From Podarcis liolepis (taxonomy: Eukaryota): a DNA stretch of 64,000 nucleotides. Positions 1,081-64,000 of the stretch are shown here, one piece after another. Every line of letters starts with the position of its first letter. The first letter of the stretch is position 1. The notes beneath the pieces are model-generated. The model did no database searches and had not been told where the DNA came from. It worked only from the letters and a program-made list of their open reading frames with translations. Both the position numbers and the translations under genes were made by a program. Location: assembly GCA_965112155.1 (NCBI GenBank), contig OZ218107.1; one strand, given 5' to 3'.

Positions 1081-2055
1081 AGTATATTCCACACATTTTG
1101 CACTTATTCACATGCAAAACACAGCCAAATGGATGTTGATCGTCCATTAACCTTCTTTTCCCTCAGTCTGGAACCTAGCCAGGAAATATACCCCCCCCCC
1201 CCGCCCCTATTTCAGCTCACTGTTTAACCAGTAGAAGTCAAAGATCAATAAGCATATTGGGTGGTTTATTTATATATTTATTATTCAAGCAAAGTAAAGA
1301 TGGCTAATTTTAAAAATATGAAGACAGGGGGGAAAATGTATGAACACGTAACACAATATGGATGACCTTTCCCTGTGGAAAGATGGGAGAATGGGAGGGG
1401 AGAAAGGAAGATTGAGGGGGAAAGAAAACATATTTTAGAATGATGAGTGAAATGCTTTTTAAGGCCAAGTTTTATAATATTTGCATAAGCTGCACTTTAC
1501 CCTGTCAAAATGGTTTCTAATTACTGTGTAGGAAAATCTGGGGTACAAGAGAGTTATAAATGGTGTACACTGGACACGTAAAGTTCAGATCCAATGGTTA
1601 GGCTAGAGACAGGCATTATTGGTTTTTTGAGAGAGCTGGAAAGAATTTGTGGCTTGTAGTACATAGAGTCATTTTATGGAGGACTGTGATGGTATTTCTG
1701 TGGTAGCATTAATTCTTTTTCTCTTTCTCCTCCTTTTGATAATGCCTGTCTGTGGGGGCTGTTTCTAAGTGCAAACGATAATTCAATATTTGCTGATTAC
1801 AATGTGTGTTCTTAAACTCTTTCCCAATTCCACAACGGACAAGAACCAAGTTAAGTTTAATATTTCGGCGTGCAGCAGCTTGCTGCTCTATCTCTAACAC
1901 AGGCTGCAACTATTATTATTGTATGAATAAAATCAAGGCATCTATAGCTATAGCAAGAAGTATAGTTTTGTTTTCTAAGGTGTACATGAAACATTTTATA
2001 TTCTTAAATTAGTAAACCAATAATTAATAATCAAATAAACAATGCATATACAGTA

Positions 2056-2297
2056 CAGTGGTACCTCGGTTTACAAACTTAAACCATTCCGGAAGTCCGT
2101 TCTTAATCCAAAACCGTTCTTAAACTGAGGCACGCTTTCCCCAATAAGGCCTCCCACCGCCGGTGCCCTTCCACCGTTTGGATTCTGTTCCTTAGACCAA
2201 GGTAAAGTTCGCAAACCGGGACACTACTACTGGTTTTGCGGAGTTTGTAAACGGAATGGTTCTTAAACAGGGCTGTTCTTAAACCGAGGTACCACTG
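2056..2297. mobile_element. Tc1/mariner (Tigger/pogo-like) MITE
   Basis: TIRs CAGTGGTACCTCGGTTTA / TAAACCGAGGTACCACTG, flanked on both sides by TA (2054-55, 2298-99). Confidence 0.9.
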
Positions 2298-2940
2298 TAT
2301 TCCAACTCTGATTCTATGGTTTCAGTTTCCTCAAATTATTTCTTAAAAACAGCGGAGGAATTGTTTTCTCTGCAGCCCCCAGGTCATCAAAATTTCTGGA
2401 AATTTTACATCTCTTTGGCTGGATTTAGGGCTGTATCATTTTTCATCAGTTCTGCTTCTGCTGGCGAGAAGGCAATAGACCTTATCTGTCTGATACAGAC
2501 CTAGGAAAGGTGGCCTGATAATGTTGTACTTCCTGTAATGCATCCTATTCCATCTTTTAAGACTTTTTGATACCTCTTAATTGGTACAAAATACAACAAC
2601 CAACCTCTTGGGAGCTCATTACATTTGTGTTCCTGGTCTGATCCATCTTGCATGTCTCCCTTAAGATGCCAGTTGTCCACAAGGCACAAAATTGAGCGTG
2701 CATTTTGGAAAATTGTTGTCTTCTGTTCCGTTTCCTTACCATACTGTAACTTGTTTGTATTTCTCAGTTCCACCTGACAATTCAACCATTATGTTGCATG
2801 TTTTTGTAAGATCATTCCGCAATGTTTCTGCTAGAGGTTTTGAATGCTTCGCAGTTCTCTTTTGGACAACAGAAGTCTCCTTTGGAAGAGTTAGAGAAAG
2901 TTGGTGTGGTTTGGATAAACCTGCTAACTTTAGTGTAATA

Positions 2941-3167
2941 CAATGGTACCTTGGTTGTTGAACTTAATCCATTCCAGGAGTCCGTTCGACTCCCAGAGCG
3001 GTTCAAAAACCAAGGCATGGCTTCCGATGGGCTGCAGGAGCTTCCCGCACTCAATTGGAAGCTGCGTCGGACGTTCAGCTTCCAAAAAAGGTTCACAAAC
3101 TGGGTTTGTGGCGTCCAGGAGCCGATTTGTTTGACAACAAAGGTTTTCGACTACCAAGGTACCACTG
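2941..3167. mobile_element. Tc1/mariner (Tigger/pogo-like) MITE
   Basis: TIRs CAATGGTACCTTGG / CCAAGGTACCACTG with TA target-site duplication. Confidence 0.85.
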
Positions 3168-3361
3168 TACAGTTTCCATATGATACTCCTGGACAGGGCT
3201 CCTGACAGGCATCCTAAAAAGTGCATAAGTTATGGATGCTTTCCCCACATTGATGCTTCATTCTTTTGTGGAAATCAGGGCTCGAAAAGAAGGACCATGA
3301 TTTGCTTAATGATATGCTGCAGAGAATTCTCTTAACCAAGAAGAGAAAAAGGCTCAGGTTC

Positions 3362-3520
3362 CATAGCTTGTTAGGTAGTATGCAGACGTTCCCAAGTTCA
3401 GTTCCTGGCATCCCTAGGTAGGGCAAGGAGAGACCTCTGTCTGAAAGCAGTCAGAGTAGACCGTACTGCACTAGATAAGCCAAAGGTCTGAGTCAGTACA
3501 GTATAAGACAACTTTCTTAC
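3362..3520 (+). mobile_element. Degenerate tRNA-derived SINE (Squam3-like)
   Basis: Resembles the reverse complement of the better-preserved copy at 24425-24606 (TGCAGA..TCCCA.GTTCA.TTCCTGGCATC..AGGTAGGG...GAGAGAC). Confidence 0.5.
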
Positions 3521-5048
3521 ATTATGTTTCTAGGTAGTCCAGCTGCTTTTCACACTGCTAGTTCCCCATACCAGATTACTTCACTGCTTTCCTTAATAAA
3601 TTCTGAAGTGAGCCAGCCAGCTCCTTGAGTCTGTAGTGTACATGTCCTCATATTAAATGATAATTGAGATTTTCCATAGAAGTTAAACTGTGAATGACAA
3701 CATCCGTTAAAAATTCTTGCCGCTGAGCAACTTAGAAACGTCAGCACATGAAGTGATTAAGACATATTAATAATTAGGAAGATGAAGTACATTCACCTTC
3801 AGAAATGAAATGGGTGCTAAATTTAGTGGTATCAGCCATTTCTAGAAACTTGGCAATTATTACACTGTGGGTTGAAGTAACTGAGGTAGCCGAATAAGGG
3901 GAGTTTAATTGTGTCCTTTTCTGCTGTTCTCAGTAGGAGGAGCAATGATGTGTGTTGATTTCAGAGCAGCACATCCACTTTGAGGACTGAAGCATATAGC
4001 TGAAATGGTTCCTTGTCTGAATGGATTTCAGGGTATAATGTTAGCTCCTCTGGAATCACACAGGAAATGCCTTGGATGTTTCCCTAAGCTTCTTTAGGGA
4101 GGCTAATTTTCTTTAGATGTTTAAAGTTTTAAAAAAACCACAGTTTGTGTCATCTTCCTTTGAATCCAGGCAGAAATGGATTACCAGTGAGTCTTGTCTA
4201 GCAAATGGACTTCCAAAACATGCAAATTAGTTGACATCCCTTCCTAGCACAGCACAGTACAAACTTTAATTTTAGACTCCACCTGTCTACAGGGAAAGTA
4301 ACAAAACAACATAGCTGCAGATCAAATGCTTATCAGGAACCAGCAAACTTTATGTGTTGGATATCTTTCACTTGTTCTTTCATTTTTCTTTTCTTTTTTA
4401 CACGTCATGTGCCCTTTGATTACCAACACAATACATCTGCATTTTTGTATTCCAGTATAAGATATGCCCTTAAACGTTCTGCTTTAGGAGGAGTGGACAC
4501 TTAAGCAATTTTAAGAGGTCATTGGAAAGTCAGAGTGCCCGAAGATCTCCCTTCAAGAAGTGGTGTATTATTTTTTGTTTATAAAAATTATGGTGTTCAG
4601 CATCCCATATATTTCAGATTCTGGTGTAGTCTTGGTCCATAAAATGGCAGTGTAGTCAATTTCAATACAATAGTATGAGCAGGAGACAAAATGAATAATT
4701 CACCCTGGCCTCTTGCTTTCTGAGATAGCGGGAATGTTGAGAACACTGTGGCAGCAATGTATTTAACCCCAGGCTCATGGGCACATGACTTGTCGTTGCT
4801 GACAAAATGCAACTTGACAATCAGCTACTGACATTTGTGCTGAGTTTGTCATCCACTGCATTTCACCATTAAGTATATCCAACAACCCCCCCAAAAAAAC
4901 TTGAATTACATTTTCTGTTTTACAGGGTTGATGATGCAAGAGAGATCTGAACAAAGAATTCAGCCCAGCGACAGGCAGAATAGATCATTTATATTGCAGG
5001 TTAATCTCTCAATTAATCAAGGGCTAAGTAGTAAGGGCATGTGAAACC

Positions 5049-5520
5049 TGTCAGAGCAAGATGGTGAAAATCTAACTAGGTAAATAAGGATGCTATTCAT
5101 TGTCAAGGTTTTCTCTAGACTAATGGAGGTTCAGAATCAGAAAATGAAGCAAGAGAGGAGGGAGACCAAGAGGCATAGATGAGTCAGGCTGGTGAAGAAG
5201 CCAGGGTGTCTCCTCCTGCTGCTGTGACAGGTTCCCCTTCCCCCTGTTCTCCATGGACCAGAAGAGGTATGAAGAGAGAGGAGCAGAGACAGGCACTTTG
5301 GCAGAGTCTCAGATTGCTTAGGAAGGACTCAGAGGAGAAAGAGATTTAAGCAGCTGTGAGAAGACAGGGCTCTTCAGCCTCTGCAACTGCTTCACAGGGG
5401 CAAGACCTACTGAGAAGAGTTGCTGTGCTTATTAGGCCTGGCTCCCCTGAGTCGGTTTCTGCTAATAAAGAGTTAACCTCACATACTCCATGTGATTAAT
5501 TGCTGGCTGGTTCACTGACA
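5049..5520 (+). mobile_element. Probable solo LTR (Gypsy-like); left boundary uncertain (5049 or 5101)
   Basis: TGTCA(G) start and CTGACA end, purine-rich U3-like part, TATA-like GATTTAAGC at about 5342 and AATAAA at about 5464. No clear TSD. Confidence 0.45.
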
Positions 5521-13293: not shown

Positions 13294-13631
13294 CTATGGG
13301 TTAAACCACAGAGCCTAGGACTTGCCAATCAGAAGGTCGGCGGTTCGAATCCCTGCGACGGGGTGAGCTCCCGTTGCTTGGTCCCTGCTCCTGCCAATCT
13401 AGCAGTTCAAAAGCATGTCAAAGTGCAAGTAGATAAATAGGTACCACTCCGGCGGGAAGGTAAACGGTGTTTCCATGCGCTGCTCTGGTTCGCCAGAAGC
13501 GGCTTAGTCATGCTGGCCACATGACCTGGAAGCTGTATGCCGGTTTCCTCGGCCAATAAAGCGAGATGAGCCCTGCAACCCCAGAGTCAGCCATGACTGG
13601 ACCTAATGGTCAGGGGTCCCTTTACCTTTAC
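13294..13631 (+). mobile_element. Sauria (POM/Squam1) SINE, slightly 5' truncated
   Basis: GGTTCGAATCCC B box, the body shared with the other three copies, and the 3' end GGTCAGGGGTCCCTTTACCTTTA. Confidence 0.9.
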
Positions 13632-34238: not shown

Positions 34239-34591
34239 GTAAAGGTAAAGGGACCCCTGACCATTAGGTCCAGTCGTGACCGACTCTGGGGTTGTGGTGC
34301 TCATCTCGCTTTACTGGCCGAGGGAGCCAGCGTACAGCTTCTGGGTCATGCGGCCAGCATGACTAAGCCGCTTCTGACGAACCAGAGCAGCGCACTGAAA
34401 CGCCGTTTACCTTCCCGCCGGAGCGGTTCCTATTTATCTATTTGCACTTTGACGTGCTTTCAAACTGCTAGGTTGGCAGGAGCAGGGACCGAGCAACGGG
34501 AGCTCACCCTGTTGCAGGGATTTGAACCGCCGACTTTCTGATCAGCAAGTCCTAGGCTCTGTGGTTTAACCCACAGCGCCACCCGCAATCC
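34239..34591 (-). mobile_element. Sauria (POM/Squam1) SINE, full length
   Basis: Reverse complement of the 13294 and 52582 elements, with an (ACCTTT)-type tail at the left end. Confidence 0.9.
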
Positions 34592-50098: not shown

Positions 50099-50456
50099 TA
50101 AAGGTAAAGGGACCCCTGACCATTAGGTCCAGTTGTGGCTGACTCTAGGGTTGTAGCACTCATCTCGCTCGCTTTATTGGCTGAGGGAGCTGGCATACAG
50201 CTTCCGGGTCATGTGGCCAGCATGACTAAGCCTCTTCTGGCGAACCAGAGCAGCGCATGGAAACGCCGTTTACCTTCCTGCTGGAGTGGTACCTATTTAT
50301 CTACTTGCACTTTTTGGTGTGCTTTCGAACTACTAGGTGGGCAGGAGCAGGGGTGGAGCAGCGGGAGCTCACCCTGTCGCGGGGATTCGAGCTGCCAACC
50401 TTCTGATCGGCAAGTCCTAGGCTCTGCAGTTTAATCCACAGCGCCACCCGCATCCC
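50099..50456 (-). mobile_element. Sauria (POM/Squam1) SINE, full length
   Basis: Reverse complement of the 52582 element, more diverged. Confidence 0.9.
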
Positions 50457-50535
50457 TATAGGGTCAGATCAAATAGTGACCAACCCTCTCCTCAGGCCAC
50501 ATTTGACAGATGGGCAGGGCTTCACTGAGAATTTA

Positions 50536-50880: not shown

Positions 50881-52917
50881 AGGTCAGGTTTAGTGGGTTG
50901 GATCCAGAATATCAGTTCTGTAATCAGAAGGGCTCCTTACTTTTTTTGGAAGTGCCTCAAATTCAGCAGAGTCCTCAGACCACCTTGTGTTACTATAAAT
51001 TTGAGAATATGTCTCCACACCCCCACCCAACCACATAAATGCAGAAAATATAAATTAACTTTAACGTAACTCAGACTCAGATTACTGAGTTGGTAATCAG
51101 ATTACAGAAAAAATTACATGAGATGGATCTAAGAGCAGTCTGAGAATTCTGGTCTGAACTAACTAATGTTGAGTTTTGGTGAATAACTGAATGATAATTA
51201 CAACATAATTCTAAATGGTTTTTTTTTAATTTAAAAAACCACTGTTATCTAGCTCAGTTAGATTTTATTATTATTTCATGCTTTCTTTGCCAGGAAAATA
51301 AAGCATTTGCTTATAAAGCAGTATACACAGAAATGTTTTAAATAAATCTGTGTTTTGTATACACTGTTTTGCTGTATTTGTATTTTCAGTTTGCTTTCAA
51401 GTGAGACTTGAAAAGGAAAGTAATAGTTTATTATTTCTGCATTTTATTTCAATTCATGATTCCAACCTTGTTCATTAAAGCTGAAGTGAAAATCTGTGTC
51501 TGAAGGACCTTTGTTGACAGAGAAACTGGCCTCCAGCACAAAATTCAATAAACATTGATTACCCAGTCTAATGCAGTTTATTGTTGATTTCTTTTCTTTC
51601 AAAAAGTAATTTACTCTTGCCAAAACATTTTTATGCATGAGGCCATCATCTAGAAATTAATTAACATTTTAGAGTGCAATAACCTAATATGAATGTCAAG
51701 TGAAACATCATTTTCTTTGACCAAAACATGGCGGTGAGTTAGCATATGAGGGAAAGTGATCTCTTTTTATAATAAAGTGCTATCATAGCATTTTCAGGAT
51801 TTCAAAGAGTAAAGTTGACATCCAGTCATTTCTAGTGCTGTAAGTGATAATTTCTGAAATAGATTTTATTTACATGGATTTATTTAATCTTCCCATTGTG
51901 AGCGCTTGAGGAATATAAATCTCTGCTCAGCAAACCGTATTCAAGCCAGTGTTGCCACCAGAACAGCATGATAACAATTACTTCAATCCTGTGTGAAACA
52001 GGGTCAACTTCTTCACAAACATCCATATTTCCTGGGATGATATTACACAGGTGGGCAGTCAGCATTTCTCTGTGAGAACTAGAAGAAAACTTGCAATATA
52101 TTTTTTCTGAGATTCTAACAATAGAAAAGAACAAAGCCTTGAAACACACTGATAATCAACAAAGCAGTCACGAGGGTCAGAAAATGAAGTTCAGCCACCT
52201 GCTCTTTATTTCAAGGCAACAATAAAAACCACTTATGAAGCATCAAAAGCCTTACATTTTTACCATACCATCAGGCTAGCATACTTCTAGTTTGATGTGG
52301 GTATAGGATGTTCTTGATCCTTATTTTGAAAGGAAAGCGTTCACCACTTCAATGCACACCTTCTGTATTTATTAATATATAATGGAATATACTGTCAGTA
52401 CCATGGGCTTATATGGGGCTAGGCAGCATTTCATAAGTAGGAAAAAAAGACAGTTCCCAGTTCCCAAGCAGCTTACAATGTAAATTTTGACTGAGAAGCA
52501 GCAGAAAACAGAGAGGGCTGGGCTGCAGTGAGCTCAGGATGCTACTGGTGCCTGAATTAGCCTGGGCTAGTCCTGCCGTTAGGGACGCGGGTGGCGCTGT
52601 GGGTTAAACCACTGAGCCTAGGACTTGCCGATCAGAAGGTCGGCAGTTCGAATCCCCGCAACGGGGTGAGCTCCCGTTGCTCGGTCCTTGCTCCTGCCGA
52701 CCTAGCAGTTCGAAAGCATGTCAAAGGGCAAGTAGATAAATAGGTACCACTCTGGCGGGAAGGTAAACGGCGTTTCCGTGCGCTGCTCAGGTTTGCCAGA
52801 AGCGGCTTAGTCATGCTGGCCACATGACCCGGAAGCTGTACGCCGGCTCCCTCAGCCAATAAAGCGAGATGAGCGCCGCAACCCCAGAGTCGGCCACGAC
52901 TGGACCTAATGGTCAGG

Positions 52918-53655
52918 CAGTGGCGTAGCGTGGGTTGTCAGCACCCGGGGCAAGGCAAGTAATTTGCACCCCCTAACCCGTGGAGCGCCCCCCCAGATGT
53001 TGTGCCCGGTGTGGGGGCGCAAGCGAGGCCCGCCTCCCGCGAAACTTCCAAGAGGTCGCCCTACGAAGCCCCTCCGGAACGCAGCCTGGAGACTAGAGCA
53101 ACGAACGACGACCCCACCGGCCCAGGCAGGCGGCGGCTTCGACGGTGCTTTTCCCGCCCAGCGATGCCGACGCACCTTGAGGCTCCCCTGGGTGGCCACG
53201 TGGCCCTTGCCCGGCGTGCTCCGCCGGCGGCGGCGGGCTACCGCTGCCTCCCGCTCCTCCGCCGCCCGCCTCCGCCTCGTCGGCGTCGTCGTCCTCCTCC
53301 ACGTCGACTACCACGTCTTCCTCTTCGTCCTCCTCCTCCAGGGCGGCCGCCGAGCCCTCCCGCCAGGGCGGCCTCCACGAGTTGTCGAGCTTGGGCAACG
53401 GCTGCGCGGCTGACGGCGAGGCGCTAAGGCGCCGGCTCCCCAGGCTGGAGCGCTTGGCCAGGCGCCGCGCTTGCATGGCTGGCCGCGCGCAGCTCGCCTC
53501 AGCGCGGCGCGTGGGAAACAGAAGCAGTGGCGGAGACGACGACCCCCACCCCAACCAAGCCTCGATTGCTTGTCCCTTCCCTCTGGACTCGCGCCCCCCC
53601 AAATGTTGCGCCCGGTGCGGCCGGCACCCCTGGCACCCCCCACGCTACGCCACTG
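52918..53655. mobile_element. Non-autonomous hAT-type DNA transposon (738 bp) carrying captured host DNA (Pack-TIR-like)
   Basis: Perfect 17-bp TIRs CAGTGGCGTAGCGTGGG / CCCACGCTACGCCACTG. Perfect 8-bp TSD TGGTCAGG at 52910-52917 and 53656-53663. No transposase ORF. Confidence 0.93.
53176..53476 (-). pseudogene. ZNF704: Transposon-captured copy of a first coding exon resembling ZNF704 (long N-terminal isoform), with a probable +1 frameshift
   Basis: Kozak GCCAGCCATGC, then MQARRLAKRSSLGSRR...SWRPP...EEEDEEEDVVVDVEEDDD. After a 1-nt shift it reads AEER...PGKG...GSLK followed by the donor AAG|GTGCGT. This matches my recall of mouse Zfp704 (MQARRLAKRPSLGSRR...GSWRPP...EEEDEEVVVEVVDGDEDDEDAEER...PKGPARGAVK). 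Length is 301 nt = 100 codons + 1. Confidence 0.72.
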
Positions 53656-54791
53656 TGGTCAGGGGTCCCTTTACCTTTTAGTCCTGCCGTTGAGATGGGG
53701 GGGTGCAGCCAGCACCAGTGGGCTTTGTTTTAGGTAGAAAAAATATTTGGGGTAGAGCATGTGGATCACATTACATCTCTACTAGTTTTCTGTTCTCACC
53801 AAATTACACACTCTTAATAAATTGAACAAGACCACTGTGGGCTGCAGGAATTCCCTGTGATTGGAGCACTTAATCAAGAAACCAGTTTTATTAACATACG
53901 CAAGAACAAGCCGAGTTGCTGTGAAAGAAATATAAAAGCCTTCTTATTAATTTTTTTGCAGTAAAAATTGTGCTAGAATTTATAGCTCTCGTAGCTGCAG
54001 AAGATCCATGACTCGACTCAGTAATTCCTTAAGTCCGAAATCAATATTTCGCTCCTGTTTCTTTTCCAAGTGGGGCAGGGATTTGGACATTCATTCAGCA
54101 GAACTGAAGCTTGAAAGACAGTTGACTGTGTATTTATATATGAGGTTTATCTGGGAGCTAACTCTGGGGTCAGCTCTCCCTGTTGCCTTTATGAGTTGTT
54201 ATAACAAAAGTGAAGAAGTATCAGTACATTCACTGAAACCTATACCAACATAAAGTTAAGGGGAACTCAAGCAGCATCCCATATAGATATACCTTCCAAC
54301 ATCTTTCAACAGAAAATTGAGATGTAGTTCAGCTGGCTTGCTGGCTGGCTCACACGGGAACATGGTGCCAAAATACGCGTGAGTCAGCTGGTTGCCTCTC
54401 CAGTCGCAGCCCCTACCTAGTAGCTGTTCAGAAAACCTTAAACCCCATTAACTGAAAAAATCGGTTGGTGGGGGTGCACAGTGGGGGTGCCACTCATGTG
54501 ACAGAATTTGGGGCAGTGTCCTGGCATACGGTTATTTCCTATTCATTTCAAATGTAGCTCAACATGGCAGTATATTGATCAAAAAGCCACAGTTCCATAT
54601 CACATCGGATGCTGCAGTGTAAAACAGATATTAGAAATTGAAACAGAAGCACTAGCATTATGAGAGGTAAAACTAAGATAGTAAACCTTCTGTCTGAACG
54701 CAGCCATAGAAATATACATGCAGCCTGGCTTCTTACTAATGAAATGCATTTTAAGTTTACAGGCCCTGTTTAATCCAGACAGCTACTACTT

Positions 54792-61543: not shown

Positions 61544-63201
61544 GCTTAAGCACTTTCTTTCCCTGCCCACACACAGCTGGAGGAGGAGCCCTTCCCCTCC
61601 TTGCCTGGCAGCCTTGGCCCCCCCCATCATTTCCTTGATAGCCTATCACTGGCCTTTGTCCCCTGCTAATGGCTCATCTTAGTGGTTATGCCAAGTTGGC
61701 CTGGGTTGTTAGCATAGCTAACAGTTTTCAACTTTTGGCACAATTTAATAAAACTTTGATTAATTCTAACTTTTCCTAAATCCAAGAGTTATGGGGTTTG
61801 CCCCACCACCCACAATATCATGATCTCCCTTCAGATCATGAAAGCCAAAATCCAAAACAGCTATCAGAACACCTCCCTTGGCAAGGCATTCCACACATGG
61901 AAGCCACGAAATAAAATGTCCCAGGCCTCTTCACCACCAGATGTGATTCATGGAGTTGAGGGATCTAGAACAAAACATCATCTGAGGATTGCAACATGCA
62001 GGGAAGAACATACAGAAGAATGCATTCAAATAACATATTACAAACAGCAGTTTGAAAACAGCAACAGCCCAGAAACGCTGAAAGCCCAACACTAATTGCT
62101 GTTAATCGTCATCTGCATCCCACAGTCAATTAGCTCAGGGTTACTATAGGCGCTGACAGAAGAAATGAACCTTTCACCATAATGTTCTAATAGTGCAGCT
62201 GTAATTTTGCAGTTGTTTGGATATCCTTGATGGTTAACTCAGCCTTTCTATTTATGAAATTTTGAAGTAGATTCCTGTCCTAGTGAAGTACTTCTGAAAG
62301 CAAAGGGATTTGTTAATTGGCTGGCAATAATTGCTTGGAGAAGGAAAGTAGTATTTGAAGAGTTTGAAAGAGTACTTAGAGTAGCTAGATGGACTGGTTT
62401 GGTTTGGTTACTAGTTAAGAACTGAGAATGTGGTTTGAGTTGTAATTTGGAGCCAAGATTTTCAAGGATCAAGAGAGAAATTGTTCAGTAAATGTACACC
62501 ATTGCTATTGAAATTTAATAGTTTACTTTCAAAGTGTTGGACTAATGGGAATGAAGTGCCAAACACTTCCACATCTGAAAGCTACCACCATGGAAAACTA
62601 AAAAGGTTTATTTGTAGTTCTGTAGGGAAAAGAAGCAATCCAGAGCAAACTAATAGGATAAATGTGGGGGGCCTCCCAGCTAATGGGGTGGTGCTTGAAA
62701 ACAACTTTGGCAAAATACCAGCATTTGATTTTCATTTTAACCTGAAAAAGGATCTTCTGAAAACATAGTAAAGTAGTACACACAAATGCACATAATAGTA
62801 TTCAGTTCTGAGAGCAAAGTTCTTAATGTGCTGAACTCAAAGGATTGGGATTATGTAGTTTCTTATCTAAGAAAAGTAAATGAACTTCTTGATCAATACA
62901 TATATAATTAACTCAGAGATGGTGCTAGACTGGAAAATTATCTACGTCGCACCTAGGCATAAGGCAGCAATTGAAAATAACTTGGGTAACTATAATCCTG
63001 TTGGTTTAATGCAATTGTATGTTATTGAAATCTGATCATTAAAGCTATAAAAGTCGAATCTAATGTAGTCGATGAGTTCAGCAAAAGTAGTTCAGCCCAA
63101 TATAATGTAATTGTTTGAGATCATGACCAGGAGTCAACAAAACACCATGTTCTTTCTGTGATTGTGGTTTTTGTTATTGTTATGGGGGGGGAGCCTATAT
63201 A

Positions 63202-64000
63202 CCGTATTTTTCGCCCCATAAGACGCACTTTTTCCCCTCCAAAAATGAAGGGGAAATGTGCCTGCGTCTTATGGGGCGAATGCAGGCTTTCGCTGAAGCC
63301 TGGAGAGCGAGGGGGGTCGGTGCGTACCGACCCCTCTCGCTCTCCAGGCTTCAGGAAGCTCTGCGCAACCCTCGGGAGACCGGCTCGAGGGTTGCGCAGA
63401 GCTGCCTGCAATCCCGGGACCAGCGCAGCTCTGCGCGGCCACCGGGAGCCGGGGGAGAAGCTCCGCCCCGCTCCCGGTGGCCGCGCAGAGCTGCGTGCGG
63501 TCCTGGGACCAGCGCAGCTCTGCCCGGCCACCGGGAGCCGGGGGAGAAGCTCCGCCCCACTCCCGGTGGCCGCGCAGAGCTGCGTGCGGTCCTGGGACCA
63601 GCGCAGCTCTGCCCGGCCACCGGGAGCCGGGGGAGAAGCTCCGCCCCACTCCCGGTGGCCGCGCAGAGCTGCCTGCCGTCGCGGGACCAGCGCAGCTCTG
63701 CCCGGCCACCGGGAGCCGGGGGAGAAGCTCCGCCCCGCTCCCGGTGGCCCTGCAGAGCTGCGTGCGGTCCTGGGACCAGCGCAGCTCTGCCCGGCCACCG
63801 GGAGCCGGGGGAGAAGCTCCGCCCCGCTCCCGGTGGCCCTGCAGAGCTGCGTGCGGTCCTGGGACCAGCGCAGCTCTGCGCCGCCATCCCGAGCGGGGCG
63901 CTAAGTCCCGCCCCGCTCGGGATGGCGGCACAGAGCTGCCTGCCGTCGCGGGACGGCAGGCAGGTCTACGCCGCCATCCCGAGCGGGGCGCTAAGTCCCG
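63202..64000 (+). mobile_element. Tc1/mariner (Tc2-group) non-autonomous element running off the window edge
   Basis: TA|CCGTATTTTTCGCCCCATAAGACGCAC terminus, the same family as 48690-49154, followed by a CpG-rich interior. Confidence 0.8.
63416..63878. repeat. Tandem array of 89-bp GC-rich palindromic units (5 full copies + partial)
   Basis: GGGACCAGCGCAGCTCTG recurs at 63416, 63505, 63594, 63683, 63772 and 63861 (period exactly 89). Confidence 0.95.

What the first reader, a model, noticed from the sequence alone, without database searches (positions are those of the whole stretch)
52918..53655. Gene-capturing ('Pack-hAT') DNA transposon carrying the first exon of a host gene, probably ZNF704
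Seen in sequence: a 738-bp element with perfect 17-bp TIRs and an 8-bp TSD (the hAT signature) and no transposase. Its interior (53012-53590) is CpG-island-like DNA. On the minus strand it reads as 5'UTR, Kozak ATG (53476), an acidic exon of about 100 codons, the splice donor AAG|GTGCGT (53176/53175) and about 160 bp of following sequence. From recall: the peptide matches the long N-terminal exon of Zfp704/ZNF704, including the exon ending in K. Inference: because donor and downstream intron-like DNA are present, capture was from genomic DNA rather than mRNA, as in plant Pack-MULEs and animal Pack-TIRs. I know of no description of such a hAT family in lizards. It would be a mobile unit dispersing a transcription-factor exon and CpG-island fragment.
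Basis: partly seen in the sequence, partly recalled or inferred. Interest (0 to 1): 0.92.

Follow-up and report, generated by a model that had tools for sequence, protein, structure and literature searches.

The report
Lizard hAT transposon carrying ZNF704 exon 1
A small, transposase-less hAT-type jumping element in this lizard genome picked up about 516 bp of the ZNF704 gene (5'UTR, first coding exon, start of intron 1) and moved it into a SINE; animal examples of such gene-carrying DNA transposons are few, and read depth suggests this one exists in several to many copies.

Summary

**The insertion.** A 738-bp element (52918-53655) has perfect 17-bp TIRs and the 8-bp TSD TGGTCAGG. It interrupts a SINE-like repeat. 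Three uninterrupted copies of that repeat in the window carry TGGTCAGG once.

**The arms.** They belong to a very abundant short MITE of about 127 bp or more. Its cargo-less form appears in all three DNA runs and in one RNA run.

**The cargo.**
- It holds 51 nt of 5'UTR, the ATG at 53476, coding exon 1, the GT donor at 53175 and 164 nt of intron 1.
- The peptide matches only ZNF704 N-termini. In spliced bird and skink ZNF704 proteins the exon ends at the same ...SLK.
- Two contigs that look like the parent locus, from related species, stop matching exactly at the cargo borders.

**State of this copy.** A private 5-bp deletion shifts the frame, and the copy has lost CpGs. It is a decaying passenger.

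**Copy number.** Contig depth suggests about 5-7 long-cargo copies. A shorter derivative may reach tens to about 200 copies.

**Capture mechanism (inferred).** Template switching during repair, suggested by 30-bp duplicated boxes and short microhomologies.

The scan's first readers noted at least 19 similar Pack-hAT candidates elsewhere in this genome. None has been checked.

The parts
52580..52917 (.). Host repeat, left part: a ~340-bp SINE-like interspersed repeat into which the element inserted. Its tail continues at 53656-53678.
   Evidence: 88-92% identical to three other copies in the window. Contig depth is very high in all runs. No tRNA or Rfam match, so it is called SINE-like only.
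52910..52917 (.). Left copy of the 8-bp target site duplication TGGTCAGG
   Evidence: Present once in the uninterrupted paralogous repeats.
52918..53014 (+). Left arm, derived from the MITE. It holds the 17-bp TIR (52918-52934, starting CAGTG) and, at its inner end, a 30-bp box (52985-53014).
   Evidence: TIR. The box is 27/30 identical to 53591-53620. Depth is about 10^5 against 13-23 for unique flanks. The cargo-less joint 52984->53596 is seen in X2, X4, X13 and in RNA.
53012..53175 (-). Captured fragment of ZNF704 intron 1 (164 nt), starting with the donor GTGCGT at 53175
   Evidence: Donor context. The parent-like contig X13 record 4 starts matching at 53011. Exon read-through products of other squamates also continue K-V-R-R.
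53176..53476 (-). Captured ZNF704 coding exon 1 (ATG at 53476). This copy is frameshifted by a 5-bp deletion after 53208 and carries an R-to-W change at 53365.
   Evidence: All three DNA runs read GCCCG behind 53208, which gives 102 codons ending GSLK|GT.
53477..53527 (-). Captured ZNF704 5'UTR (51 nt), forming the right border of the host-derived DNA
   Evidence: Two parent-like contigs (X13 record 4 at depth 17, X4 record 22 at depth 48) both stop matching at 53527. They then run on for 599 and 748 nt of unlike sequence.
53528..53590 (.). 63 nt of unresolved origin. It begins inside a TIR-like 11-mer, CAGTGGCGGAG (53525-53535).
   Evidence: Not matched by the parent-like contigs. The 11-mer matches the TIR at 10 of 11 positions and lies 66 nt before the box, against 67 nt in the left arm. 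The sequence in between is not significantly similar. It is contiguous with the ZNF704 5'UTR in a contig of depth 1116 (X4 record 23).
53591..53655 (+). Right arm, derived from the MITE: the 30-bp box (53591-53620) and the 17-bp TIR (53639-53655)
   Evidence: Depth is 3.5-9.4 x 10^5.
53656..53663 (.). Right copy of the TSD TGGTCAGG, followed by the tail of the host repeat to 53678

Best explanation
This is a non-autonomous hAT-type element of the Pack-TIR kind.

**Shown.**
- Both ends come from a very abundant short MITE: CAGTG... termini, 17-bp TIRs, 8-bp TSD.
- Between them lie 516 bp copied from the genomic ZNF704 locus: 51 nt of 5'UTR, coding exon 1 and 164 nt of intron 1.
- A further 63 nt are of unresolved origin.
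- After capture the chimera moved as a unit. Here it landed in a SINE-like repeat and made a fresh TSD.

**Supported by depth only.** The chimera appears to have multiplied into a small family.

**Inferred.**
- Capture happened by template switching while a double-strand break or gap at a MITE was being repaired, or at a stalled fork (the gap-filling / FoSTeST type of model).
- The new strand copied the MITE past its central 30-bp box, then switched by GTGG microhomology into ZNF704 intron 1.
- It copied through exon 1, switched again at CAG, and rejoined the MITE's right half. This would leave the box duplicated on both sides of the insert.
- The copy in this window is a decaying passenger. 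It has a private 5-bp frameshifting deletion and CpG-to-TpG losses, which suggest that it is methylated and does not act as a protected CpG island or coding exon.
For: - **Insertion.** TIRs, TSD and paralogous empty sites.
- **MITE family.** The cargo-less joint 52984->53596 appears in three DNA runs, and in 30 RNA reads of a fourth. Arm depth is about 10^5, against 13-23 for unique flanks.
- **ZNF704 identity and exon border.**
- **Genomic origin.** Donor plus intron are present. The parent-like contigs X13 record 4 (53011-53527, depth 17, 22 mismatches) and X4 record 22 (ends at 53527, depth 48) run on into sequence unlike the arms.
- **Both junctions seen in other runs.** X2 record 14 covers 52969-53086 with 0 mismatches at depth 87. 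X4 record 23 covers 53469-53592 at depth 1116.
- **Multicopy.** Cargo contigs have depth 70.5 in X2 (flank 13.9) and 161 in X4 (flank 22.5). They share this copy's R-to-W change at 53365.
- **Decay.** The 5-nt GCCCG is present in all runs and restores 102 codons ending GSLK. 8 of 15 listed differences are CpGs lost in this copy.
- **Box duplication and microhomology.**
- **No other ZNF704 exon in the window.**
Against: - No autonomous hAT with these termini was seen, so the hAT assignment rests on TIR and TSD alone.
- This copy's TSD does not fit the common nTnnnnAn pattern.
- The parent locus was seen only as short contigs from related organisms, not in this assembly.
- Copy numbers come from summed contig depth, which the tool warns is not a copy number. 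No second copy with its own TSD was seen.
- The TIR-like 11-mer sits exactly at the cargo border. This fits a two-MITE composite at least as well as a template switch.
- The 63 nt at 53528-53590 are unexplained.
Confidence: 0.85

Rival explanations
1. Composite (two-MITE) transposon. Two MITE copies had inserted on either side of ZNF704 exon 1, one in the 5'UTR and one in intron 1. This fits the hAT habit of landing at gene 5' ends. The transposase then used the outer TIR of each and moved the DNA between them. No template switching is needed.
For: - CAGTGGCGGAG at 53525-53535 matches the TIR at 10 of 11 positions and sits exactly where the parent-like contigs stop.
- It lies 66 nt before the 30-bp box, against 67 nt in the left arm. 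So 53525-53655 looks like a whole 131-bp MITE variant.
- The model would also explain why first-reader notes elsewhere in this genome keep reporting first-exon and CpG-island cargo (unchecked).
Against: - The left MITE lacks its own right end and inner TIR. It stops after the box at 53014.
- The 55 nt between the TIR-like motif and the box are not similar to the left arm (p about 0.18).
- Parent-like contigs from two organisms show no MITE at either border. Later excision or polymorphism cannot be excluded.
- X4 record 23 shows that this segment mostly travels with the ZNF704 5'UTR, not as an independent MITE.
Confidence: 0.2
2. The interior is the ordinary internal sequence of this hAT family, and the ZNF704 resemblance is low-complexity chance.
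For: The peptide is acidic and Gly/Pro-rich. Part of the interior (53372-53590) has high depth.
Against: - The non-repetitive N-terminus MQARRLAKRSSLGSRR..., the WRPP.REGSAAALEEEDE block and the ...SLK|GT exon end all align with ZNF704 of birds, a gecko and skinks.
- The commonest family form skips the whole interior (joint 52984->53596).
- Contigs near single-copy depth carry the interior without the arms.
Confidence: 0.03
3. Assembly chimera, or a genuine ZNF704 exon 1 in place with unrelated MITE fragments beside it.
For: GC-rich first exons are often misassembled. Only one copy lies in the window.
Against: - An exact TSD lies within a repeat whose other copies are continuous across the site.
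- Both arm-cargo junctions are present in contigs of other runs.
- No other ZNF704 exon lies in the 53 kb downstream or the 10 kb upstream.
Confidence: 0.02

Closest known systems
Pack-TIRs of animals (Tan et al. 2021, PMC8277862), for example Pack-hAT-N8_XT of Xenopus tropicalis, which carries 291 bp of the CAPSL 5'UTR
   Same: A non-autonomous hAT with TE termini on both sides of a short fragment duplicated from a host gene. Its own TSD shows that it transposed. The cargo comes from a gene's 5' end. That paper notes that multicopy Pack-TIRs tend to capture GC-rich DNA.
   Different: - The host is a lizard; the survey lists 0 Pack-TIRs for anoCar2.
- The cargo holds a complete coding first exon plus its donor and intron DNA.
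- Depth suggests more copies than the 3-5 reported for the four multicopy vertebrate cases. This is unproven without the genome.
Pack-MULEs of rice and other plants
   Same: A transposase-less TIR element that carries genomic gene fragments including introns. It prefers GC-rich sequence (PMC5861414) and amplifies after capture.
   Different: A different superfamily. MULEs have long TIRs and 9-11-bp TSDs; this element has a 17-bp TIR and an 8-bp TSD. It is not a member.
Ds-type derivatives of Ac formed by abortive gap repair with filler DNA (own knowledge: Rubin and Levy 1997; the gap-filling model is reviewed in PMC8277862)
   Same: hAT elements whose interior is replaced by foreign DNA through template switches at short microhomologies, often with duplication of element sequence next to the filler.
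   Different: Those cases were worked out experimentally in maize. Here the mechanism is only inferred from junction structure.
hobo_AC and its non-autonomous relatives in Anolis carolinensis (Novick et al. 2011, PMC3014272)
   Same: Lizard hAT elements reported to capture and incorporate extraneous 'filler' DNA.
   Different: - Their TIR is different (TAGGCTTGMTC).
- Their filler is mostly other TEs, not host exons.
- None of the 37 Anolis hAT families listed has the CAGTGGCGTAGC terminus.
- None of the longer (14-20-nt) Anolis TIRs tested occurs in this window; the only matches were three isolated hits to the 11-nt hobo motif with one mismatch allowed.

Membership tests
hAT superfamily, non-autonomous element (MITE-derived) | 8-bp target site duplication | tested here: met
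   TGGTCAGG on both sides, and present once in three paralogous uninterrupted repeats.
hAT superfamily, non-autonomous element (MITE-derived) | Short TIRs with the terminal motif YARNG | tested here: met
   17-bp perfect TIRs starting CAGTG. The motif is as stated in PMC3014272.
hAT superfamily, non-autonomous element (MITE-derived) | TSD fits the usual hAT target pattern (nTnnnnAn or similar) | tested here: not met
   TGGTCAGG has G at positions 2 and 7. One copy cannot define a family pattern, so this is weak evidence.
hAT superfamily, non-autonomous element (MITE-derived) | A matching autonomous element that encodes a hAT transposase | not testable with these tools
   No transposase is in the window: the eight ORFs of 130 aa or more that lie outside the element and were scanned (of 13; the three on the element were not scanned) have no Pfam hit. 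The rest of the genome could not be searched.
Pack-TIR (as in Tan et al. 2021) | TE-derived termini on both sides of internal non-TE DNA | tested here: met
   The arms have depth around 10^5, and the cargo-less form skips 52985-53595. The interior has far lower depth.
Pack-TIR (as in Tan et al. 2021) | The internal DNA is a duplicate of a host locus that exists elsewhere without the TE ends | tested here: inconclusive
   Parent-like contigs in related organisms (X13 record 4, X4 record 22) match only 53011-53527 and run on into unlike sequence.
Pack-TIR (as in Tan et al. 2021) | Multicopy: further copies with different TSDs | tested here: inconclusive
   Depth of cargo and junction contigs is 5-7 times the single-copy level, and about 50 times for 53469-53592. 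No flanks of other copies were seen.
ZNF704 exon 1 | N-terminal sequence and exon end shared with annotated ZNF704 | tested here: met
   E = 1e-18 to the 424-aa ZNF704 isoform of Porphyrio. The exon ends ...SLK| as in the spliced Lerista, Porphyrio and Grus proteins once the 5-nt variant is read.
Pack-MULE | Mutator-like long TIRs and a 9-11-bp TSD | tested here: not met
   17-bp TIR and 8-bp TSD. It works like a Pack-MULE but is not one.

The most novel reading that the evidence does not exclude
This element may be one instance of a genome-wide habit. An abundant hAT MITE family in this lizard lineage would repeatedly capture CpG-island first exons of many genes and amplify them, on a scale of hundreds or more per genome. 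That is comparable to rice Pack-MULEs and far above the at most 38 per genome reported for animals. It would give a vertebrate system in which the capture mechanism and its bias for gene 5' ends can be dissected. The basis is 19 unchecked first-reader notes in about 470 windows, plus the multicopy signal seen here.
Probability: 0.35. Interest if true: 0.85.

Novelty: new member of a known kind. Interest (0 to 1): 0.6.

Why it matters
Gene-fragment capture by cut-and-paste transposons is well documented in plants. In animals it is rare, mostly single-copy, and mostly independent of transposition (370 cases in 100 genomes, four of them multicopy; PMC8277862).

This case has clear anatomy:
- both junctions are defined;
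- a duplicated subterminal box brackets the insert;
- there are short microhomologies at the junctions;
- there is a candidate parent locus;
- there is evidence of later transposition and possibly of amplification.

It scatters a transcription factor's start codon, acidic N-terminal exon and splice donor around the genome. That is raw material for chimeric transcripts and exon shuffling. If the many similar unchecked notes in this genome hold up, the lineage would allow a test of why 5' CpG-island DNA is preferentially captured.

Tried and rejected
- The word 'ZNF704' occurs in no note.
- **Rfam and ARAGORN** on 52300-54000 and on the host repeat found nothing. The host repeat is therefore called SINE-like only.
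- **Pfam** on eight window ORFs of 130 aa or more outside the element found nothing, so there is no transposase here.
- **Anolis TIR motifs** from PMC3014272: the longer motifs gave no match in the window, and the 11-nt hobo motif gave three isolated hits with one mismatch allowed, taken as chance for so short a motif. This family is not one of the described Anolis hATs.
- **Second CpG-rich block** at 63251-63950. I considered it as a possible second Pack element and rejected that; it is an 89-bp tandem array.
- **mRNA-based capture** is rejected because the donor and intron DNA are present.
- **Presence at the orthologous site in related species.** The contigs end at 53656 at the repeat boundary, so this could not be decided.
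- **RNA run X23** gave only 1-8 reads on the cargo, and they carry the parent-type letters. It says nothing about expression of this copy.
- **Not done:** no structure or complex prediction was run, as none would bear on the question.

Full report

Yes. The stretch 52918-53655 (738 bp) ends in 17-nt arms that are 100% complementary, at 52918-52934 and 53639-53655. The 17-mer is found nowhere else in the 64-kb window even with three mismatches allowed; 0.02 matches are expected by chance. Directly outside the arms lies TGGTCAGG, at 52910-52917 and 53656-53663.

The strongest evidence for a true insertion is internal to the window.
- The flanks are the two halves of a ~340-bp interspersed repeat.
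- Three further copies, 88-92% identical, lie at 13294-13629, 34586-34241 and 50458-50100.
- All three run straight through the site and carry TGGTCAGG once. They act as paralogous empty sites.

The interior has GC 0.70-0.77 and CpG o/e 0.94-1.13, against 0.35-0.40 and 0.1-0.5 in the unique flanks.

**2. What are the arms?**

I laid contigs of three DNA runs from three related organisms (coded A, C and H) on 52300-54300.
- Unique flanks have depths of 13-14, 22-23 and 10-12.
- The arms have depths of 10^5 to 9 x 10^5.
- A joint 52984->53596, which skips the whole interior, occurs in all three DNA runs and in 30 RNA reads of a fourth run.

So the arms belong to a very abundant short MITE. It is about 127 bp in the form seen at that joint. 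Other joints and loose ends show variants with extra internal motif copies.

The terminus CAGTG fits the hAT motif YARNG, and the TSD is 8 bp. This terminus is not among the 37 hAT families described for Anolis. None of the longer Anolis TIR motifs I tested occurs in this window; the short 11-nt hobo motif gave three isolated one-mismatch hits, which I take as chance. No transposase gene lies in the window.

**3. What is the cargo?**

The minus strand from 53476 to 53177 translates to 100 codons beginning MQARRLAKRSSLGSRR.

Scored against 1.8 billion representative proteins, it hit 11 proteins.
- Nine of them, including the best eight (E from 5e-22 to 6e-13), are short products that start with the same N-terminus and read on into intron.
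- Two of these carry the NCBI name 'zinc finger protein 704-like' (Aquila, Malurus). The best hit is a Gekko kuhli protein.

A second search, with a longer member, reached three more informative proteins:
- a 424-aa 'zinc finger protein 704 isoform' of Porphyrio;
- a 272-aa ZNF704 of Grus;
- a spliced 188-aa protein of the skink Lerista.

In these three, exon 1 ends ...SLK and the protein continues A(A/T)SIKREMTF...LLEQKRKVVSSNIDVPPAR. BLASTP of the window's exon against the Porphyrio protein gives E = 1e-18 over residues 1-92. The unspliced products of other squamates continue K-V-R-R after the exon, as the window does.

No other ZNF704 exon is found in the window by tblastn.

The presence of the donor and intron DNA rules out capture from mRNA.

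**4. Borders of the captured DNA and the candidate parent**

One search lists two contigs that behave as the source locus should.
- **X13 record 4** is 1335 nt at depth 17, about single-copy in that run. It matches 53011-53527 with 22 mismatches and 8 gap letters. It continues for 211 nt and 599 nt into sequence unlike the window.
- **X4 record 22** is 858 nt at depth 48. It matches 53418-53527 at one end. Its other 748 nt are unlike the window.

Both stop at 53527. The host-derived DNA is therefore 53012-53527:

| Part | Coordinates |
|---|---|
| Intron 1 fragment, 164 nt | 53012-53175 |
| Coding exon 1 | 53176-53476 |
| 5'UTR, 51 nt | 53477-53527 |

At the left junction, GTGG (53011-53014) is shared by the MITE and the parent-like contig. 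At the right junction, CAG (53525-53527) is shared with what follows.

The remaining 63 nt (53528-53590) are not matched by the parent-like contigs, and I cannot assign them.

**5. Architecture that bears on the mechanism**

The insert is bracketed by a 30-bp direct repeat of MITE sequence, 52985-53014 and 53591-53620, identical at 27 of 30 positions. Another first-reader note on this stretch, s1-843563, saw the same repeat. The cargo-less form has this box once (joint 52984->53596).

One model explains this pattern. A strand copying a MITE from its left end passed the box, switched template into ZNF704, and later rejoined a MITE right half that also included the box. This is the abortive gap-repair or gap-filling picture, or its replication-fork version FoSTeST (PMC8277862).

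One feature argues for caution. CAGTGGCGGAG at 53525-53535 matches the TIR at 10 of 11 positions, sits exactly at the cargo border, and lies 66 nt before the box. The true left TIR lies 67 nt before its box. The sequence in between is not significantly similar.

This makes 53525-53655 look like a complete MITE variant. It keeps alive a composite model, in which two MITEs flanked exon 1 at the source locus and moved together. Three points count against that model:
- the left arm lacks a right end;
- the parent-like contigs show no MITE at either border;
- a contig of depth 1116 (X4 record 23, 53469-53592) shows that the 63-nt segment mostly travels joined to the ZNF704 5'UTR.

I put template switching at roughly 55-60% and the composite model at about 20%. 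The rest is undecided.

**6. It is not an assembly artefact, and probably not a one-off**

Both junctions occur in contigs of other runs.
- X2 record 14 covers 52969-53086 with no mismatch, at depth 87.
- X4 record 23 covers 53469-53592.

Contigs on the cargo proper have depth 70.5 in X2 and 161 in X4. That is 5-7 times the single-copy depth of the same runs. They differ from the window by only 3 mismatches in about 300-360 nt. They also share the window's W codon at 53365, where the parent-like contig and all orthologues have R.

Depth rises further towards the right arm. For 53372-53572 it is 970-1850 in X2, 1300-5350 in X4 and 136-560 in X13. My reading is a small family of long-cargo copies plus a shorter derivative present in tens to about 200 copies, the latter also in organism H.

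This is an inference from summed contig depth, which the tool warns is not a copy number. I saw no second copy with its own flanks.

**7. State of this copy**

All three DNA runs read five extra letters (GCCCG) behind 53208. With them the exon has 102 codons and ends ...GPGKGHVATQGSLK|GT, as in the skink and gecko proteins. Without them the ATG frame slips and ends CAA G|GT. The window's copy therefore has a private frameshifting deletion.

Of the 15 differences listed within the cargo, 8 are CpGs that this copy has lost. These include the four transitions (53146, 53189, 53193, 53411) at which all three runs read C where the window has T. The CpG-island look is thus inherited from the source and is being eroded, which suggests germline methylation. 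I see no evidence that this copy acts as a promoter or a coding exon. The one RNA run gave 1-8 reads on the cargo, and they carry parent-type letters.

**8. Comparison with what is known**

This is a Pack-TIR in the sense of Tan et al. 2021 (PMC8277862). That survey reports:
- 370 cases in 100 animal genomes, 208 of them hAT;
- only four multicopy cases, three in Xenopus tropicalis and one in alligator;
- a tendency of multicopy cases to carry GC-rich DNA;
- 0 cases for its one lizard, anoCar2.

Rice Pack-MULEs prefer GC-rich gene sequence in the same way (PMC5861414) but belong to a different superfamily. Anolis hobo elements take up filler DNA, mostly other TEs (PMC3014272).

I therefore file this as a new member of a known kind.

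**9. Earlier notes of this scan**

First readers have flagged at least 19 hAT elements with captured first-exon or CpG-island cargo on other pieces of the same genome. The source genes named include PRKAR2A, UBE2G1, GNAL, PPAT, RANBP9, TAL1 and others. None has been checked, and I could not check them. I use them only for the 'novel case'.

**10. Limits**

- The source genome outside the window could not be searched.

Noticed in passing
window 53525-53535: A TIR-like 11-mer, CAGTGGCGGAG (10 of 11 matches to the TIR), sits exactly where the ZNF704-derived DNA ends. It lies 66 nt before the 30-bp box, as the real left TIR does (67 nt). This makes 53525-53655 look like a whole MITE variant nested at the right end.
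   Followed up: partly
window 53372-53590 (read laying): Contig depth climbs stepwise from the left part of the cargo towards the right arm, by about 10-30 fold, in all three organisms. This suggests a shorter and more successful derivative that keeps only the ZNF704 5'UTR and start codon region.
   Followed up: partly
window 13294-13629, 34241-34586, 50100-50458, 52580-52917 with 53656-53678: Four copies of a ~340-bp SINE-like repeat, 88-92% identical, ending ...GGTCCCTTTACCTTTA. Depth in all runs is enormous. ARAGORN and Rfam detect no tRNA-like head.
   Followed up: partly
window 63394-63954 (runs off the window end): A GC-rich 89-bp tandem repeat, 6.3 copies at 91% match. AT-rich sequence and a TE-like stretch starting near 63200 precede it. 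It is the only other CpG-rich block in the window and is not a gene start.
   Followed up: partly
window 53656 (X4 record 24): In organism C, the contig covering the unique right flank stops matching exactly at the first base of the TSD and has 3 further unaligned letters. This is a weak hint that the orthologous site is empty in that organism.
   Followed up: no
window 52984->53596 joint in RNA run X23: The cargo-less MITE form appears in 30 RNA-seq reads of organism H, so copies of the MITE lie inside transcribed regions.
   Followed up: no
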